Assembly: GCA_001179505.1 (NCBI GenBank)
Contig: CDMY01000937.1
Coordinates: 1-9,736, forward strand
Origin: Vitrella brassicaformis CCMP3155
Lineage: Eukaryota; Protista; Chromerida
DNA: 9,736 nucleotides
Direction of reading: 5' to 3'
Under the pieces are notes generated by a model, which worked only from the letters and a program-made list of their open reading frames with translations, did no database searches and was not told the origin of the DNA. Position 1 is the first letter of the stretch. Every line of letters starts with the position of its first letter. A program made the position numbers and the translations under genes. Positions 281 to 9,688 of the stretch are shown piece by piece.

Positions 281-1695
281 TCAATCCCGTCTTCCTCCTC
301 CCATTGCAGGCCCCGTCCTGGTTGAGGCGGAGTTGGTGATAGCTGCATTGGGACGGGGGCCAGTGGAGATATGTGGCGCCGTCGGAGACCTCGAGACCTT
401 TCTCCAAACCCAGCAAGGGAGAATTTGTCATCTGGAATGCCGCGGATGTAGGGGGAGAAGCGAGCCCGCCTCTCTAATATATATCCAGCCAGGCCCAGCT
501 CATCAAGGTCTTCATATGTGTGGTCGGCCTCGAGAGCCCCCAGGACCTCGTGAATAGCCAACGCTCGGCCAAATGGTCCCGTCCGCTGAGTAAGCGAGTG
601 CCTCTGCCTGACGAGCTCCCAGAAATGTTCGATAGGCATGTCGAGGTTTGGTGTCTGATCAGGGATGTCCTCGATGACCAAGCTCAAGTGCTCGCGGGCC
701 AGCCTTAGGAGGTTGCCCATTCGGTAGCCCTCCCTCCTCAGCCGGTCCCATCCACGCTCCATAGCCTTTTTCAGAGTCTCGTCCTTGACCCTCATGGCGA
801 CAAATCGCTCTTTCAGAGCATCGGCAAGGTCTCGGGGAATCGCATGCTCGCCAACCTTCAGACCAGCCTCTGCATCCTGTGGGGACTCATGTCTCCGTNN
901 NNNNNNNNNNNNNNNNNNNNNNNNNNNNNNNNNNNNNNNNNNNNNNNNNNNNNNNNNNNNNNNNNNNNNNNNNNNNNNNNNNNNNNNNNNNNNNNNNNNN
1001 NNNNNNNNNNNNNNNNNNNNNNNNNNNNNNNNNNNNNNNNNNNNNNNNNNNNNNNNNNNNNNNNNNNNNNNNNNNNNNNNNNNNNNNNNNNNNNNNNNNN
1101 NNNNNNNNNNNNNNNNNNNNNNNNNNNNNNNNNNNNNNNNNNNNNNNNNNNNNNNNNNNNNNNNNNNNNNNNNNNNNNNNNNNNNNNNNNNNNNNNNNGC
1201 ATCCTGTGGGGACTCATGTCTCCGTTTTCCCCGACCAATTGGCACAGCAGCAGCAGCAGCGGCAGCTGCGGCAGGCATTGGGTGGTCTGGCTCAGGCTGG
1301 GGCTGAGGCGGGGCATCACGCATTTGGTCGTCTGTGTCGGGCTGAATGTTGGGCAGGGGAGGGAGGTATGGGGGAGGCATCGGTATGTTTTCGGGAATCA
1401 CTGGTGGCGGAGGGGCATTCGGGTGGAGGAGCGGTCCGTGTTCGCCCGGCGAAGGGACGATTGGTGGCAGTATTGCACGGCCGCCCGCTTGCAATGCAGG
1501 AGGCGGTGGAGGGGGGGCAGGTGCTGCTGCTGCTGCAGCTGCTGCAGGTGGAGAACCTCTCGCCCTTCCTGCAGCCTGACGATTCCTCGGACCTCTCACC
1601 CGCAGTAAGGGCTCGCCTCGACGATTTAAACCGTCCAGACGTGGCGGGAGTCCAAGCTCACTTCGCCAGTCTTCAGCCTGTTCCCGCCTGTTCAT
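34..1695 (-). CDS. Intronless Pro/Ala-rich protein with a central helical region; possible gag-like ORF1 of a retroelement (about 444 aa if gap 1 is collapsed)
   Basis: Long ORF from ATG 1695 with two poly-Ala/Pro tracts, then a globular-looking segment (DLADALKERFVAMRVKDETLKKAMERGWDRLRREGY...HFWELVRQRH...YILERRARFSPY). It has no microsatellite introns, unlike the host genes in this window. The frame is preserved when the duplicated gap flanks are merged. The gag call is inference; no Zn knuckle or RT is seen. Confidence 0.6.
   Translation of the reverse strand: MNRREQAEDWRSELGLPPRLDGLNRRGEPLLRVRGPRNRQAAGRARGSPPAAAAAAAAPAPPPPPPALQAGGRAILPPIVPSPGEHGPLLHPNAPPPPVIPENIPMPPPYLPPLPNIQPDTDDQMRDAPPQPQPEPDHPMPAAAAAAAAAVPIGRGKRRHESPQDXXXXXXXXXXXXXXXXXXXXXXXXXXXXXXXXXXXXXXXXXXXXXXXXXXXXXXXXXXXXXXXXXXXXXXXXXXXXXXXXXXXXXXXXXXXXXXXXXXXXXRRHESPQDAEAGLKVGEHAIPRDLADALKERFVAMRVKDETLKKAMERGWDRLRREGYRMGNLLRLAREHLSLVIEDIPDQTPNLDMPIEHFWELVRQRHSLTQRTGPFGRALAIHEVLGALEADHTYEDLDELGLAGYILERRARFSPYIRGIPDDKFSLAGFGERSRGLRRRHISPLAPVPMQLSPTPPQPGRGLQWEEEDGIEEEEEQRAVVPPAWPLVEFPRLTVSLLTKRWTTPFPPQHHPKVPPFPHTLCLCEMLEASKWTMNWIHFLMLRRTSGQVMIQS
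899..1198. other. Scaffold gap (300 N), probably a false gap
   Basis: An identical 27-mer, GCATCCTGTGGGGACTCATGTCTCCGT, lies at 872-898 and 1199-1225 on either side of the N run. Confidence 0.85.
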
Positions 1696-3887: not shown

Positions 3888-4187
3888 NNNNNNNNNNNNN
3901 NNNNNNNNNNNNNNNNNNNNNNNNNNNNNNNNNNNNNNNNNNNNNNNNNNNNNNNNNNNNNNNNNNNNNNNNNNNNNNNNNNNNNNNNNNNNNNNNNNNN
4001 NNNNNNNNNNNNNNNNNNNNNNNNNNNNNNNNNNNNNNNNNNNNNNNNNNNNNNNNNNNNNNNNNNNNNNNNNNNNNNNNNNNNNNNNNNNNNNNNNNNN
4101 NNNNNNNNNNNNNNNNNNNNNNNNNNNNNNNNNNNNNNNNNNNNNNNNNNNNNNNNNNNNNNNNNNNNNNNNNNNNNNNNNNNNNNN
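3888..4187. other. Scaffold gap (300 N)
   Basis: N run. Unlike gap 1, the flanks show no overlap. Confidence 0.95.
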
Positions 4188-4432
4188 GCCAACAGCCTCC
4201 CAGATGCAGCCCAAAATGATTGATGTGCCTCCCTCCCGTGCTACGCCTTGCATCAGCCACGTGACACTACTCGCCTCGGGCCACACACAAGCAGTTTCCC
4301 GTCTCTGTGGCAAGGTCTAGCAAAAGAGGGGACGCACCAGCTGCTTCACACGCGTGAATTGAATGACACGCCCCATCAAACAAGGCACATCAACCCACAT
4401 CACCAGGCGCCTGCCTGCCTGCCTGCCTGCAG

Positions 4433-4515
4433 ACCGTCTGTCTACCCGGCTGGTGTGTCAGGAATGGCCAGATCGGTCGTCATTCAAAACCAACATGAAT
4501 GGCAAAAAAAGAGGG
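4433..4515 (+). other. Candidate isolated exon of an unresolved plus-strand gene
   Basis: Preceded by (CTGC)n-AG and followed by GTAAGG plus (GGGA)n. It reads either RLSTRLVCQEWPDRSSFKTNMNGKKRG or TVCLPGWCVRNGQIGRHSKPT*. Neighbouring exons are not established. Confidence 0.3.
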
Positions 4516-4695
4516 GTAAGGATGGCTGGGAGGGATGGAGGGAGGGAGGGAGGGAGGGAGGAAGGGCAAAAGGGGGCTGGCTGGGCCACACTAAAAGGCT
4601 GAGTGAGAGACGGGCATGCATCGCATCGATCGCATCGATGGAATGAAAATCGGGCGGTGAGTGAGTGAAGGATGGATGGATGGATGGACAATGGA

Positions 4696-6138
4696 TCACC
4701 ACTCGTCGTCTTCTTCCTCATCCCCCTTCCCTGGCCGCCTGCACACACACACACACACACACACACACGAACGAACATGTAGACACATGCATCCGCCTTG
4801 CGTGCATTTATCACCGCCCGTCCGTCCATCCATTGAGTGCCTACTTGTCTGTGTCAGTTTGTTGCCGCCTGCCCTGTGTGTACGCCTGGTACTGCGGGCG
4901 TCTGTATCCCTGTTGCCTCAGGTACTCCTCTGCCTCAGGATCGATCCCCTCCCGAATCCAGCTCTCCTTGGCGTCCTCATACTCGTCCAACGCACGACGA
5001 ATGCGCGCTCGCTCACGGCGTCGCGCACTGAACGAACGAAGTGAATGGTTGTCAGCCGACTATGTGATGCAGTCGTCGCTATGGTGTGGTCGGTCGCCGC
5101 GTACCTGGCGGCCTGTTGCCAGAGGCCGAGTACGAGCACCCCCACAGCGCCTGTCGTGAGCCACAGGCCAGTCGCCTTGTCGCCCGCACTCACCACCTCC
5201 TCCACCACATCGTCGGCCACATCGGACGATTGCCTGACACACACACATCCACCCCCAGACATCCACCAACAGTCATCCATGCCATGCCATGTGTGTCGCT
5301 CGCTAGTCAGTACGCCGGCCGACCTGACCTGCGTCGCAGGAATGCGATCATTGAGAGGAGTTTCCGCGCTGACGGGGTGTGGGGGGCGATGGTGGCCAGA
5401 CCTGCCGGTCCGGCAGCTGGCGATGTGGCTGTCGTGGGAGGCAGTGGGATGGATGTGAGGTGCATGTTGAGCCACCGATAGACAAACACCGTCAGCCCGA
5501 TGATCAACAGATGCTTCAGACATATCTGCAGGAAGGCCTGCACACACACACACACACACACGCACGAACAGATACATACACATTCCCCTATGGGGTATGT
5601 CGGCATGCGCCTCCTCTGTCTGTCAGCGCACCGCATCCGTGATTGGCATGTGGTGCAGTCTTGTCCACTGCCCCTTGGCAGCATGGAACGTCCTCATCAG
5701 CTGACCAGACACTGCCGAACAGAACTGCCTCACCAACACAGGATACCAACACGCACCCGCACCTCCTGCACCGACATCGGCCGCCAGCGCCGTCACATTG
5801 CCCTTCGACGATGCCGAGGCGGCCTCAAGGGCAGCAACAGCCTCCCTCCGTTGATAGACCTCAGCATAGCTCGAGGGGTAGAACCGCTCAGCAGACGATG
5901 TCACAGGGGCCACGGGCGGCTGCCGAGTGTCTGCGTGTGTCTGCGGTGGCGGCACGGCCACGGATGCGCCGAGGGTCGGTGCGAGGCGAGCACTGGCTGA
6001 TGACGGCCTGATGTGGTGACGCGAAAGGCGGACAGAGGGAACGGTGCTGTGGAAGGTGAAGGCGGCAGCGAGGTGAGCAACAGCAGCCACATATACAAGA
6101 ACCGCCAAGCGGGCGACAAGCAGGGAGGGCGACGACAT
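4696..6138 (-). CDS. Plastid-targeted hypothetical membrane protein, about 339 aa; exons 6138-5763, 5711-5632, 5537-5329, 5233-5105, 5027-4845, 4738-4696
   Basis: All introns are GT-AG with matching phases (1,0,2,2,2); the 51-nt first intron is in frame and uncertain. The N-terminus MSSPSLLVARLAVLVYVAAVAHLAAA-FTFHSTVPSVRLSRHH looks like a signal plus transit peptide. Two hydrophobic segments (ICLKHLLIIGLTVFVYRWL; GLWLTTGAVGVLVLGLW) are followed by a charged helix (ARRRERARIRRALDEYEDAKESW) and an acidic end (GDEEEDDEW*). Confidence 0.85.
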
Positions 6139-6418
6139 GATAGATGAGCAGCACACAAACGTGCAGGGCTGACTCCGGAACTTCGGCATGGATCACATAA
6201 CCAATGACGCCCGGCGCACTCTCTCGACGAAGCTGACCCCTTCAAACACTTGCAGATCCTCGCAACTAAGCTCGCAGTTGAAGACAATCCAGGAGCGCAT
6301 CAAGCATCCATCTGTCCATCCATCTGCAAGAGCTGCCACAACCCGTGTTTGGATCTCTCATCACTTTGAGTGCAAGCCTTACGCAGCTGGTGTTGGTTCC
6401 ATTAGAGCTACCGAGAGC
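6139..6418. promoter_or_regulatory. Short divergent intergenic region; probable bidirectional promoter and 5' UTRs
   Basis: 280 bp separate the ATG at 6138 (-) from the ATG at 6419 (+). No specific element is confidently identified. Confidence 0.55.
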
Positions 6419-7811
6419 ATGCCTTCCTCTCCCGCCCATCGACCATCGCCATTTCGGCTCTTTCTCACCCTCGCGGTGGTCTGTCTATGCCAGATCTGCT
6501 CGTCAGTGGTGCTGGCGTTCAGGCCAGCGCTGCACTCGGTGAATGGCCTGTCGAGGAGCGGCGCTGTGCTGGGAAGGGAGAAGAGGCAAAGGCAACATCC
6601 TGTGCTGCTGCATGGGAGGAATGGTGTGGTGTTGATGAGCTTCTCCACTGGTGGGTGGGTCACACGGAGGAATGATTGATTCACCATCCACGTGTGTGTG
6701 AGTGCGTGCAGAGACTGAGAAGGATGTGACTCCTGAAGAGGCAGCTGAGGTGGGCGGGGCGGGCAGGCAGGCAGACAGGCAGACAGGCAGACAGGCAGGG
6801 ACATGTGGGATGGATGGTTGGCATGTGTTACCAAGGTGCCATCCATCCATTCATCCCTCCCCTGCGTGACAATGTGTGTGTGTGTGTGTGTGCTTGGTGT
6901 GTGTGCAGTTTCAGCGAAAGGTGTCTTGGGAGAATCCCATCGACCCGCCGGTCAAGCAGGAGATCAAGCAGCAGGTCCAGGGCAAACTCAGGCAACTCAA
7001 AGAATCGGGTAAGTACATAGGCAGCAGATAAAGTGGATTGGGGCGCGTGTGCGTGTTTGAGTACATCATCCTTATTAATTCTTGTGTGTGTGTATCCATC
7101 GTCCATCCACGTGGACTGACAGGTCTGTACGATCAGCTTTACAACCAGACGGCGGTGGACCAGATGAATGTCTACAAGGGGCCGTACGACAGCGACAACA
7201 TACTCAAGAACCTCTACACCGAAGTCACGGAGAGGATAGAATGGCCATGTCAGTACGCCACGCCCTGGCCAGTGGGACGGACGGGGCACTCACTGTGCTT
7301 CGGCCGGCTGACTCCGTGTGTGTGTGTGTGTGTGGGTCATGGGGTCCATGTGTCTGTGTGTGTGCAGCATTTGGCCGTCAGGCGGAGCTGCTGATCAAGT
7401 TCTTCATCTTCTGCTTTGTCGTCATCCTTTTCTCACTTGCCACCGTAGGCATCGCATCGCATCGCATCGCATCGCATCGCATCGCATACCTACACACACA
7501 CAGAGAGAGGGATGGGTGCCTGCATCCGGTGCATCCATGTATGTATCCCTCTCCCCCTCTATCGCTGCGTGCCGTGCCTGCAGGAGCTCCTGGCTCAGTA
7601 CTTTCTCAAGGCGGTGGGCGACTTTCCCGACGTCGACCCCTGGACCTGGCTCATCAAGTCAGTCAGTCACCACACTCTCACTATCTCTCACACACACACA
7701 CACGAACAGACTTACTTCGTCGCACGCGTCCACGTCGATCGCACACGGACGGATGGATGGATGGATGGTGCAACAACTCTGTCTGCCCGCACATCGATCG
7801 CTCTCTGCCCC

Positions 7812-7845
<34 letters not shown>

Positions 7846-7958
7846 GTACCATCCGCTCATTCAGAGGCCCCACATGGCGGTCAGGAGGCAATCCGCTGGG
7901 ACGGTACGCAATGCATGTCTCTCTCTGTTCGGGCATACTTGTTGACGTCAGACACTAG
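6419..7958 (+). CDS. secE: Nucleus-encoded, plastid-targeted SecE-like preprotein translocase subunit, about 230 aa; exons 6419-6650, 6712-6749, 6909-7008, 7123-7248, 7368-7444, 7584-7657, 7865-7903, 7952-7958 (3' end uncertain)
   Basis: GT-AG introns with matching phases. The leader is FRLFLTLAVVCLCQICSSVVLA-FRPALHS.... The spliced core ILKNLYTEVTERIEWPSFGRQAELLIKFFIFCFVVILFSLATELLAQYFLK fits the SecE pattern of amphipathic helix, WP hinge and single TM, and resembles my recollection of plant SECE1 (EEVKEIEWPAF). Gene structure confidence is about 0.85; the SecE identity about 0.65. Confidence 0.65.
7448..7487. repeat. (GCATC)n microsatellite inside an intron
   Basis: Direct reading; it starts within the first few bases of the intron whose GT donor is at 7445. 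Confidence 0.9.
7813..7845. repeat. (TCTG)n microsatellite inside an intron
   Basis: Direct reading of the sequence. Confidence 0.9.
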
Positions 7959-8319
7959 GGGACGTTTGATGATTCCCAAGGACACTCACCCACAATCATG
8001 TATGTTTCTGGTGTGCTGCGTGCTGTGTGCTGTGTGCTGTGTGCGCCACTCAGGTATTTTTTCCTCCCGACGCAGGAGGCGCAGTGACTGACGCTACGCT
8101 GGATGGGATGGGCGGCGACACCATCACCGACAAAGAAACAAGTAGCTAGACGACTAAGGCGTTCACTCATTTAGAAGTGGGGGGGCAGGCAGGGAGGCCA
8201 GTGTGGGCTGGAGGATCGGTGTGTGTGTCGTTCGTTTGAGCGGTGTGTGTCATGAGAGAGACGGACAAGGAAACAAACATACATATAGATGCACTAGCGC
8301 GCGCAGGTGTGGGGTAGTA

Positions 8320-8545
8320 CACGGATGGATGGATGGATGGATGGGCTGAATGAGTGCGCACGCTGGCGGGGCAGACAAATTGATGGATTGATTGATTCCT
8401 GGAAGCCACATGAATGCTTGCTGTGCCGTTCATTCCGTGAGTCAGTCAGTCAGTCAGTCAGTCATTTGTCCGTCAGCTCCCCTACCGAGCTGTCTACACA
8501 TCCGATCGACAGCGGCACAAGTTTGTCTGTCTGTCTGTCTGTCTC
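8320..8545. repeat. Cluster of (GATG)n, (GATT)n, (GTCA)n and (TCTG)n microsatellites; non-coding
   Basis: Direct reading. The ORFs here are microsatellite-derived. Confidence 0.8.
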
Positions 8546-9063
8546 GCTCATGCTCACATCGATCACACATGCAAGACACACAGAACGTACGTACGTATAC
8601 CGCACACATGCATCGATATTAATATACCACATCAGATTCAGCGGTTCTACGAAATTCCCGCATTTGTACATTGCGCACAAACGCCTCGTGTCTCGCTGCA
8701 ACGATACCTTGGCGCGCAACGAGACACAATTAATGACGGACCCAGACCAAACCAAGTAAGAGACACGAAAGCACATTGTCACCGAGTGCATGCGAAGCGT
8801 CCTTAAGTGCCTCACAACGTCATTTCATCGGTTGGCTTCCATGACAGGAGTAGCGAGGCCCTGTGACATGAAAGGCATACCAAGTCGCTCCAGCCTCGCG
8901 GCCGATTTAGTAATTGCACAGGCGATATACAGGGCTTTCTTTTATCTGTTCGGTTGAAAGACAGAGTACATCGTTACGGTACGTGTGTTGGTACCGGTTC
9001 TGTACGTGCAGTACGGTGTGTGAGTGTATGGGATCGTTCGGCCGATCCCGAGTCCTTTACCAA

Positions 9064-9688
9064 TCACAAACACACGATCTCCCCAACAGACCCCCGATGA
9101 ATGGATCTCTGCTCATCCTGCATGCCTTTGTGTGAACAGCCTTGCCGTGCGGGGGTTTTCTGCTTCGCGAGCATCTGCACCGCCAGATCAACATCCACAC
9201 CGCCGCTCCAATTTGGCGCAGCAGCTGCAGAGGGAAAAGACGCGGACAGAGACAGCAATGCAGACAGGCATGAGCCAGTCAAGATCCTCGTGCAGTTTTG
9301 GCGTGCCCAGCGGTGGTCGCGGCTGTTTGCCGCTGAGGGCTGTCGCCATCCGTACTGTACACATCAGAGGACCAGTTCCTCGGGACTTCCGTCCGATTGG
9401 AATGTAACGGGCTCTGAAGCCGGTGCATCATCCTGCGCGTGGGCAGAGAATTCAAGTGGAAGTTCAAGTTGCTCCGCCGGAGACTGAGCCCCCAGGGAGC
9501 CCCCAGGATGATCGAATTGTTCCTGAAGATGCTGACCACGGAGCTCACCGCCGCTCAACCGCAACACGACGTTGAACACGTCATGAAAGTCAGCGATGAA
9601 CCAGCAGATCTTCTCAGCGGCGAGGCGCATGTCATTGACCCAGAGAGCACAGGCGCCACTGGGACCAACGACGTGACCTGCGGCCTGC
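9064..9688 (-). CDS. Partial hypothetical gene (3' exons 9688-9549 and 9224-9064); strand and intervening structure ambiguous
   Basis: TTTCTGTAG acceptor, then a GC3-rich segment (ALWVNDMRLAAEKICWFIADFHDVFNVVLRLSG) and a G|GTGAGC donor. A strong TCTTTTCCCTCTGCAG acceptor then precedes a phase-compatible exon, AAPNWSGGVDVDLAVQMLAKQK...IVCL*. The intervening DNA also looks coding. Confidence 0.35.

What the first reader, a model, noticed from the sequence alone, without database searches (positions are those of the whole stretch)
6419..7657. Hidden SecE-like subunit for a complex red-derived plastid
Seen: the motif LYTEVTERIEWP|SFGRQAELLIKFFIFCFVVILFSLAT|ELLAQYFLK only appears after splicing, because intron 7249-7367 splits it at the WP hinge. 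It is therefore invisible in the six-frame ORF track. Established: SecE (amphipathic helix, conserved WP, TM clamp) partners SecY; it is nucleus-encoded in green plants, while secA/secY are commonly plastid-encoded in red lineages. Inference: this is the nuclear SecE of a secondary plastid, with an extra ~90-aa soluble region and a Trp-rich C-terminal extension (DFPDVDPWTWLIKGPTW). I do not know whether it has been described in this lineage.
Basis: partly seen in the sequence, partly recalled or inferred. Interest (0 to 1): 0.7.

Follow-up and report, generated by a model that had tools for sequence, protein, structure and literature searches.

The report
Candidate divergent plastid SecE gene
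A small, spliced and expressed gene of the alga Vitrella brassicaformis encodes a plastid-directed single-pass membrane protein that looks like the so far missing SecE partner of the plastid's SecY protein-export channel, but standard sequence-profile tests do not confirm the kinship.

Summary
An 8-exon GT-AG gene (6419-8087, + strand) encodes a 239-aa protein. It is identical to an uncharacterised Vitrella brassicaformis CCMP3155 protein (CEM37317.1). Intron 7249-7367 splits the IEWP|SFG hinge, and no six-frame ORF shows the motif. Spliced transcript contigs fit the model to the base, and a related metagenome contig keeps the exons (96.7%) but not the introns (68.5%).

The SecE reading is plausible but unproven. 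In favour:
- a signal peptide with Phe at +1 and a basic transit-like stretch;
- helix, W-P break, then one long membrane helix;
- the [KR]-[IV]-x-W-P-S hinge and an acidic residue 28 after the Trp, as in 72 of 91 bacterial SecE;
- protein-language-model neighbours that are only clusters holding SecE (PF00584) members, the nearest from diatoms;
- a published chromerid inventory with plastid-encoded SecA and SecY but no SecE.

Against:
- no Pfam or NCBIfam SecE match;
- my own SecE HMM, hhalign and an anchored matrix see only the WPS hinge;
- no homologue outside Vitrella;
- fold searches are non-specific;
- the tail after the membrane helix is unusually long.

I put about 0.6 on a divergent plastid SecE. 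That would be a new member of a known kind, of moderate interest.

The parts
6282..6418 (+). 5' untranslated leader, as far as the transcript contigs reach
   Evidence: X2 record 6 starts at 6282 and X1 record 2 at 6300. There is no ATG in 6282-6418.
6419..6650 (+). Exon 1, residues 1-78. It holds the signal-peptide-like segment (1-33, ...VVLA), Phe34 at +1 and a basic transit-peptide-like stretch (34-77).
   Evidence: It is 100% identical to P0001 residues 1-77. The donor GT is at 6651.
6712..6749 (+). Exon 2, residues 78-90 (acidic start of the likely mature protein)
   Evidence: GT-AG borders. The length is needed for the 454-nt sum.
6909..7008 (+). Exon 3, residues 91-124 (soluble, helical)
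   Evidence: It is 98% identical in relative L001.
7123..7248 (+). Exon 4, residues 124-166. It holds the helix 147-161 and the hinge R-I-E-W-P.
   Evidence: It is 96% identical in L001.
7249..7367 (+). Intron 4, which splits the hinge right after W164-P165 (phase 1, inside the Ser166 codon)
   Evidence: GT...AG borders. It is 72.7% identical with 30 gap columns in L001, against 95-96% in the flanking exons.
7368..7444 (+). Exon 5, residues 166-191: SFGRQAE plus the hydrophobic membrane core
   Evidence: Kyte-Doolittle 19-residue windows reach up to 2.6.
7584..7657 (+). Exon 6, residues 192-216: Glu192 (28 residues after the Trp), the end of the long helix and the start of the Trp-rich tail
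7865..7903 (+). Exon 7, residues 216-229 (GPTWRSGGNPLGR)
8054..8087 (+). Exon 8, coding part: residues 229-239 plus the stop TGA. The 3' UTR runs on to at least 8315.
   Evidence: The transcript contigs cover 8053-8315.

Best explanation
The gene encodes a highly divergent, nucleus-encoded SecE of the Vitrella plastid.

Inferred route: the precursor enters the ER through its signal peptide. It then crosses the inner plastid membranes by means of the Phe-initiated transit peptide. It inserts with its N-terminal soluble part and surface helix (147-161) on the stromal side. The long helix 166-203 crosses the thylakoid membrane, and perhaps the inner envelope, and the 36-residue Trp-rich tail faces the lumen.

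There it would clamp the plastid-encoded SecY, as bacterial SecE clamps SecY, so that SecA-driven export can work.

Shown here: gene structure, expression as spliced RNA, purifying selection, the motif and the helix-break-helix layout. Inferred: targeting, topology, binding to SecY and homology itself.
For: 1. Gene model and expression. Spliced contigs fit to the base and the translation is identical to P0001. Exons are 96.7% identical to the relative and introns 68.5%, with 13 of 15 exon changes at third codon positions.

2. Presequence typical of red complex plastids. The role of Phe at +1 is from PMC12136025.

3. Hinge. E157-x3-R-I-x-W-P-S compares with cyanobacterial E-E-L-x-K-V-V-W-P-S. 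W and P are invariant in 38 SecE, and K at -3 and D at +28 are nearly invariant; P0001 has R161 and E192 there. An acidic residue at W+28 occurs in 72 of 91 SecE.

4. AlphaFold2 layout. Helix 147-161, a break at I-E-W-P, then one 38-residue helix with pLDDT 92-98.

5. Atlas neighbours.
- By features, the nearest clusters are two diatom clusters of 209 and 176 aa (scores 0.87 and 0.85, 200 and 194 shared features) and a streptophyte SecE cluster (0.83).
- When clusters with any PF00584 member are skipped, no usable hit remains.
- By shape of the core, the diatom cluster gives TM 0.74 and a bacterial SecE cluster TM 0.60.

6. Need. SecA and SecY are encoded in the Vitrella plastid genome, and SecE is listed as absent in both chromerids.

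7. Low Pfam sensitivity. Only 28% of the plant SecE cluster and under 10% of the diatom clusters carry PF00584. A Pfam miss is therefore common for plastid SecE.
Against: - No SecE hit in Pfam or NCBIfam at E<=10 for the whole protein or for residues 130-239 or 145-210.
- My HMM of 86 SecE cores gives -0.5 bits (E 0.05 for one sequence) and aligns only around WPS.
- hhalign gives P 0.015 and probability 2.9%.
- An anchored matrix gives -10.9 bits, against 61-116 bits for real SecE. 57% of block shuffles with WP held fixed score as well.
- The exhaustive phmmer run finds no homologue outside Vitrella, not even in Chromera.
- The PDB sequence search gives no SecE.
- Fold searches with my own models are non-specific.
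- From the Trp to the C-terminus there are 76 residues, against 37-53 in 91 SecE (corrected count).
- Atlas scores below 0.9 are only leads by the tool's own calibration.
Confidence: 0.6

Rival explanations
1. A lineage-specific, plastid-targeted single-pass membrane protein unrelated to SecE, for example a small photosystem, assembly or membrane-shaping subunit. Its W-P at the membrane interface would be a convergent or chance feature.
For: All profile and matrix tests fail beyond the WPS hinge. There are no relatives outside Vitrella. The long C-terminal tail and the roughly 70-aa N-terminal soluble part are untypical. Helix-kink-helix shapes match many unrelated proteins.
Against: The combination [KR]-[IV]-x-W-P-S directly before a membrane helix, an acidic residue at +28 and a plastid presequence should be rare by composition. 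My rough estimate, not a tool result, is well under one per proteome. The language-model neighbours are exclusively SecE-bearing clusters. Vitrella needs a SecE and none is known.
Confidence: 0.3
2. A genuine SecE homologue that serves a second, inner-envelope SEC system, like plant SECE2 with SCY2, rather than the thylakoid channel.
For: Plants have two plastid SEC systems (stated in PMC6242988). The unusual extensions might reflect a specialised paralogue.
Against: Only one SecY and one SecA are listed for Vitrella, both plastid-encoded. No second SecE candidate is known. I could not separate the SECE1 and SECE2 types, because no eukaryotic SecE sequences could be fetched.
Confidence: 0.07
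3. Not a plastid protein at all: a secretory-pathway or ER membrane protein whose signal peptide merely resembles a bipartite leader.
For: Targeting is inferred from sequence only. The cleavage-site motif is reported as weaker in chromerids (PMC12136025).
Against: Phe at +1 is followed by a 44-residue stretch with 7 K/R and 1 D/E, which is typical of transit peptides. The nearest language-model neighbours are plastid or bacterial SecE clusters.
Confidence: 0.05

Closest known systems
Bacterial and cyanobacterial SecE (Pfam PF00584; solved examples 7xha_E, 5eul_E, 3din_D, 2zjs_E/5aww)
   Same: A surface helix, then a W-P hinge, then one long membrane helix. The hinge is [KR]-[IV]-x-W-P-[ST]. 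An acidic residue lies 28 residues after the Trp.
   Different: There is no significant profile match. Alignment needs a 3-residue insertion (F-G-R) after WPS and a 1-residue shift before it. P0001 carries a roughly 70-aa N-terminal soluble part and a 36-aa Trp-rich tail. It is nucleus-encoded with a bipartite presequence.
Plant chloroplast SecE (SECE1, thylakoid; SECE2, envelope)
   Same: It is nucleus-encoded and imported, with a single C-terminal membrane helix and an N-terminal stromal extension (established knowledge). A streptophyte SecE cluster is the third-nearest Atlas neighbour, with score 0.83 and 191 shared features.
   Different: It could not be aligned here because no plant sequence could be fetched by reference. 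Plants use a simple transit peptide, not a signal peptide plus transit peptide.
Two diatom 'hypothetical protein' clusters of the ESM Atlas (209 aa with 54 members; 176 aa with 64 members)
   Same: They are the nearest neighbours by language-model features (0.87 and 0.85). For the 209-aa cluster the shape of the core also matches (TM 0.74 over residues 140-208). Precursor length is similar. Both vanish from the list when PF00584-bearing clusters are excluded.
   Different: Fewer than 10% of their members carry PF00584.
Cryptophyte nucleomorph-encoded secE
   Same: A SecE gene of red-algal nuclear ancestry serving a complex red plastid (PMC9548191).
   Different: It is recognisable as secE by ordinary annotation and is encoded in the nucleomorph, not the host nucleus. 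It was not compared here.

Membership tests
SecE (PF00584 / bacterial-type SecE) | Significant match to a SecE sequence profile | tested here: not met
   Pfam and NCBIfam give no SecE hit at E<=10. My own HMM gives -0.5 bits. hhalign gives probability 2.9%. Positive controls work: 38 of 38 SecE sequences hit PF00584, and the same profile finds the solved SecE chains.
SecE (PF00584 / bacterial-type SecE) | Hinge motif with invariant Trp-Pro, preceded by a basic and an aliphatic residue and followed by Ser/Thr | tested here: met
   P0001 has R161-I162-E163-W164-P165-S166. W and P are invariant and K is nearly invariant in 38 SecE.
SecE (PF00584 / bacterial-type SecE) | Invariant Glu six residues before the Trp | tested here: inconclusive
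   P0001 has Val158 at -6 and Glu157 at -7. MAFFT aligns Glu157 to the invariant column only by adding a one-residue gap.
SecE (PF00584 / bacterial-type SecE) | Acidic residue near the far end of the membrane helix, 28 residues after the Trp | tested here: met
   72 of 91 SecE have D/E at that spacing, and P0001 has Glu192. If the 3-residue insertion favoured by HMMER and MAFFT is accepted, this match is lost.
SecE (PF00584 / bacterial-type SecE) | Surface (amphipathic) helix, break, then one long membrane helix | tested here: met
   AlphaFold2 without an alignment gives helix 147-161, a break at 162-165 and helix 166-203 with pLDDT 92-98. The hydrophobic moment is 0.35-0.41, against a median of 0.42 in SecE. 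The shape is not specific to SecE.
SecE (PF00584 / bacterial-type SecE) | Protein ends shortly after the membrane helix | tested here: not met
   There are 76 residues from the Trp to the C-terminus, against 37-53 (median 41) in 91 SecE.
SecE (PF00584 / bacterial-type SecE) | Fold match to solved SecE chains | tested here: inconclusive
   Foldseek on the PDB gives no SecE. VIA-align's top 50 are coiled coils. In the Atlas, with the Atlas's own model of the core, a bacterial SecE cluster gives TM 0.60. With my model a SecE cluster appears only in row 9 at TM 0.43.
Plastid SEC translocon subunit | Partner SecY and SecA present in the same organelle, and no other SecE known | tested here: met
   This is a literature look-up. 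SecA and SecY are encoded in plastid genome HM222968 (Vitrella), and SecE is marked '-' for both Chromera and Vitrella (PMC6668581, supplementary file 4). I did not search the Vitrella proteome myself.
Plastid SEC translocon subunit | Plastid (stroma-side) targeting | tested here: inconclusive
   The evidence is sequence features only: a signal-peptide-like segment 1-33, Phe34 at +1 and a basic stretch 34-77, with the motif's meaning taken from PMC12136025. No predictor or experiment was available.
Plastid SEC translocon subunit | Physical association with SecY and a requirement for SEC-dependent transport | not testable with these tools
   This needs multimer modelling, co-purification or genetics.

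The most novel reading that the evidence does not exclude
This is the SecE that published inventories of chromerid plastids list as missing. Together with poorly recognised diatom proteins it would form a divergent 'complex red plastid' SecE lineage. That lineage would have gained a stromal soluble domain and a lumenal Trp-rich tail, giving the SecYE channel of these plastids an extra docking or regulatory surface that bacteria and plants lack.
Probability: 0.3. Interest if true: 0.55.

Novelty: new member of a known kind. Interest (0 to 1): 0.45.

Why it matters
SecY is not known to work without SecE in bacteria or plant chloroplasts (established knowledge). Yet the published table of translocation components for Chromera and Vitrella shows plastid-encoded SecA and SecY and a blank for SecE (PMC6668581).

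A concrete candidate makes that gap testable. It also suggests that SecE of red-derived complex plastids is routinely missed by Pfam or KEGG-type annotation. Finally, it offers a handle on thylakoid protein export in the closest photosynthetic relatives of apicomplexan parasites.

It does not change the known picture of SEC transport, so the interest is moderate.

Tried and rejected
1. Homologue searches for P0001.
- Exhaustive phmmer with residues 85-239 returned only P0001 itself, an unspliced ORF of a close relative (P0002), and a repeat-derived ORF (P0003) whose WPSF match I take as chance.
- A word-indexed search at E<=10 gave nothing new.
- A JGI metagenome scan gave no relative.
- The PDB sequence search gave no SecE.

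2. Attempt to fetch eukaryotic plastid SecE for a bridging profile. I searched with an alignment of 38 SecE sequences, placing a 199-aa sequence first to widen the length window. The 120 rows shown were all cyanobacterial. No plant, red-algal or diatom SecE could therefore be aligned, and no phylogeny was made.

3. Fold searches on two AlphaFold2 models gave only generic long-helix or coiled-coil matches, so I rejected them as evidence either way.

4. DUF5499 (E 0.14, below its cut-off) was rejected as noise.

5. TatA/Tha4-like reading. It was considered and rejected because the order of elements is reversed there (membrane helix first, amphipathic helix after). Only one weak Atlas row pointed that way.

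6. Sec61-gamma. It was rejected because that protein is tail-anchored without a presequence (established knowledge).

7. Splicing of the upstream neighbour gene. No GT-AG solution fitted the contig pieces near a masked repeat, and Pfam found nothing in neighbouring ORFs.

The many 'joints' at 7698-7770 to 8521-8526 are microsatellite cross-matches, not splicing.

Full report
**What is in the sequence**

The window is eukaryotic nuclear DNA. It has about 57% G+C, short GT-AG introns full of microsatellites, and two 300-N gaps.

From the ATG at 6419 I built an 8-exon model on the + strand:
- 6419-6650
- 6712-6749
- 6909-7008
- 7123-7248
- 7368-7444
- 7584-7657
- 7865-7903
- 8054-8087

It encodes 239 residues. 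Intron 4 (7249-7367) lies directly after W164-P165.

In the six-frame list the halves of the motif sit in different ORFs (7038-7394 and 7082-7945), so the joined motif cannot be seen without splicing.

**Is the gene model real?**

Three independent lines say yes.

1. Two runs hold transcript-like contigs that jump the introns. X2 record 6 aligns 6282-6649 to its positions 1-368 and 8053-8315 to positions 823-1085. X1 record 2 does the same. After the one-base ambiguities at the borders, 454 nt are left between, which is exactly the sum of my six internal exons (38+100+126+77+74+39). The DNA-like runs X3 and X4 cover the introns.

2. A database search, made with the unspliced ORF that contains exon 1, returned a 239-aa protein identical to my translation. 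It is named 'unnamed protein product [Vitrella brassicaformis CCMP3155]', accessions CEM37317.1 / A0A0G4H183, and has no Pfam domain on record.

3. A 3.5-kb metagenome contig from a close relative (L001, found through P0002) aligns from 6863 to 8397. The coding exons are 96.7% identical, with 13 of 15 differences at third codon positions. The introns are 68.5% identical with 220 gap columns. That is the signature of purifying selection on precisely these exons.

**The protein**

- Residues 1-13 carry two Arg.
- Residues 14-33 are a 20-residue hydrophobic core ending ...VLA.
- Residue 34 is Phe.
- Residues 34-77 have 7 K/R against 1 D/E.

This is the layout of a bipartite presequence of plastids of red-algal origin. 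In these, a Phe at +1 of the transit peptide is the hallmark, although the motif is reported as weaker in chromerids (PMC12136025). Targeting remains an inference.

The likely mature part starts with an acidic, helical soluble region of about 70 residues (78-146).

AlphaFold2 without an alignment then gives a helix at 147-161, a break at I-E-W-P (162-165), and one uninterrupted helix at 166-203 with pLDDT 92-98. This long helix contains the hydrophobic core. After it comes a poorly modelled 36-residue tail with three Trp.

**Tests of SecE kinship by sequence**

Direct scans failed:
- Pfam and NCBIfam at E<=10 give no SecE hit for the whole protein or for residues 130-239 or 145-210.
- The PDB sequence search finds no SecE.
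- An exhaustive phmmer run over 1.84 billion representatives finds only the protein itself, the relative's unspliced ORF and a repeat-derived ORF.

To get my own yardstick I fetched 120 bacterial loci through a ribosomal protein L11 pattern. I took the ORF upstream of nusG and obtained 91 SecE sequences, about half of them cyanobacterial. All 38 representatives hit PF00584 (best E 6.7e-22). Their profile also finds the solved SecE chains, so the controls work.

Against this set:
- HMMER with all filters off gives -0.5 bits (E 0.05 for a single sequence) and aligns only R-I-E-W-P-S plus part of the helix, with a 3-residue insertion.
- hhalign gives P 0.015 and probability 2.9% over 9 columns.
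- A gap-free matrix anchored on the Trp gives -10.9 bits, against 61-116 bits for real SecE. 57% of block shuffles that keep WP fixed do as well.

So, outside the hinge, the residues are no more SecE-like than chance when measured against bacterial SecE.

**What does match**

SecE conservation is concentrated in very few columns. In 38 sequences only E, W and P are invariant, and K, V and D are nearly so. P0001 compares as follows:
- W164 and P165 match the invariant W and P.
- R161 sits in the K column.
- I162 sits in the V position before the Trp.
- S166 follows the Pro, as in most cyanobacteria.
- Phe occupies the V column.
- Glu192 lies exactly 28 residues after the Trp, where 72 of 91 SecE have D/E.
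- The invariant Glu aligns (Glu157) only with a one-residue gap.

The hydrophobic moment of the pre-hinge helix (0.35-0.41) is close to the SecE median of 0.42.

**Evidence from the ESM Atlas**

With residues 85-239, the nearest clusters by language-model features are:
- a diatom cluster of 209 aa, score 0.87, 200 of 256 shared features;
- a diatom cluster of 176 aa, score 0.85, 194 shared features;
- a streptophyte cluster in which 28% of members carry PF00584, score 0.83, 191 shared features.

Repeating the same query while leaving out every cluster that has a PF00584 member left no usable hit. The diatom clusters therefore contain SecE-annotated members, and everything near this protein in that space is SecE.

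With the core alone (140-215), the Atlas's own model matches the 209-aa diatom cluster at TM 0.74 and a bacterial SecE cluster at TM 0.60.

By the tool's own calibration, scores under 0.9 are leads, and a third of shuffled proteins also get family-consistent neighbours. Even so, the family found is the one predicted beforehand, and the shared-feature counts are in the range typical of true family members.

These numbers also show that PF00584 misses most plant and nearly all diatom members of these clusters. A Pfam miss is therefore weak evidence against a plastid SecE.

**Fold searches with my own models**

These are uninformative. They return long-helix and coiled-coil proteins at Z 5-6, Foldseek finds nothing, and a SecE cluster appears only in row 9 at TM 0.43.

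**Biological context**

- Supplementary file 4 of Fussy et al. 2019 (PMC6668581) lists SecA and SecY as encoded in the plastid genomes of Chromera (HM222967) and Vitrella (HM222968). It lists SecE and SecG as '-' in both.
- A preprint on apicomplexan-like parasites likewise treats secA and secY as ancestral chrompodellid plastid genes (10.1101/636183).
- Cryptophytes keep secE in the nucleomorph, which shows that SecE of the red lineage is a nuclear gene of the endosymbiont (PMC9548191).
- Full-text searches found no paper describing SecE in chromerids, diatoms or haptophytes.

So a SecE is expected in Vitrella, none is known, and this protein is a fitting candidate.

**Weighing**

By composition, the conjunction should arise by chance in well under one protein per proteome. 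The conjunction is the [KR]-[IV]-x-W-P-S hinge immediately before a membrane helix, an acidic residue at +28 and a plastid presequence. This is my rough estimate and not a tool result, while one true SecE is expected. That, together with the Atlas neighbours, favours SecE.

Several points hold the confidence down:
- every profile test fails;
- no Chromera orthologue was found;
- the C-terminal tail is long;
- I could not align any eukaryotic SecE.

I put 0.6 on a divergent plastid SecE and 0.3 on an unrelated lineage-specific plastid membrane protein. The rest goes to an envelope-type paralogue or a non-plastid protein.

**Comparison and novelty**

If the reading is right, this is a new and very divergent member of a known family, not a new kind of system. 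The particular features are:
- the bipartite presequence;
- the roughly 70-aa stromal region;
- a 3-residue insertion after WPS;
- the Trp-rich lumenal tail, conserved in the relative.

**Limits**

- No eukaryotic SecE sequence could be fetched by reference, so no bridging profile or phylogeny was made.
- No multimer model, targeting predictor or Vitrella-wide proteome search was available.

Noticed in passing
window 4200-6243, minus strand: A head-to-head neighbour gene. Transcript contigs (X1 record 1, X2 record 5) cover 4200-4401, 4844-5027, 5105-5232, 5328-5529 and 5631-6237/6243. Its 5' end therefore lies only about 40-60 bp from the 5' end of the SecE-like gene (6282-6300), which suggests a very short shared promoter region. 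Its first ORF (6189 downwards, MPKFRS...) also has a hydrophobic signal-like core followed by ...AAAF, so it may be a second plastid-targeted protein. Pfam finds nothing in it, and I could not resolve its splicing near a masked repeat at 5530-5630.
   Followed up: partly
L001 (ENA metagenome ERZ893784, contig k147_3884660), 66-1672 = window 6863-8397: A second Vitrella-like lineage exists in an environmental assembly. It is 79% identical overall, with exons nearly unchanged (4 amino-acid changes in residues 90-239) and introns heavily rearranged. It could serve for comparative gene-model checks across this genome.
   Followed up: partly
window 7715-7899 and 8455-8639: Very high summed contig depth (over 1,000, against about 10-50 elsewhere) and dozens of false 'joints' between 7698-7770 and 8521-8526. 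They are caused by (GGAT)n and (GTCT)n microsatellites that recur genome-wide. Introns here also carry (GCATC)n at 7449-7485 and (TG)n/(CA)n runs.
   Followed up: no
window 899-1198 and 3888-4187: Two assembly gaps of exactly 300 N each. ORFs that span them (for example 34-1695 on the minus strand) are artefacts of the gap.
   Followed up: no
P0003 (202 aa, from the protein library): An ORF made of three tandem ~70-aa repeats, each holding SWPSF(S/T)RS-IRIEYFV-CS. It matched the hinge and helix region at E 1.5e-4. It looks like a translated DNA repeat rather than a relative, and its source is unknown.
   Followed up: no
window 8885-9442: Further transcript-like contigs in run X2 (8885-9132, 9308-9442) point to another expressed gene downstream. 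The ORFs there (9024-9407, 9101-9487) have no Pfam match.
   Followed up: no
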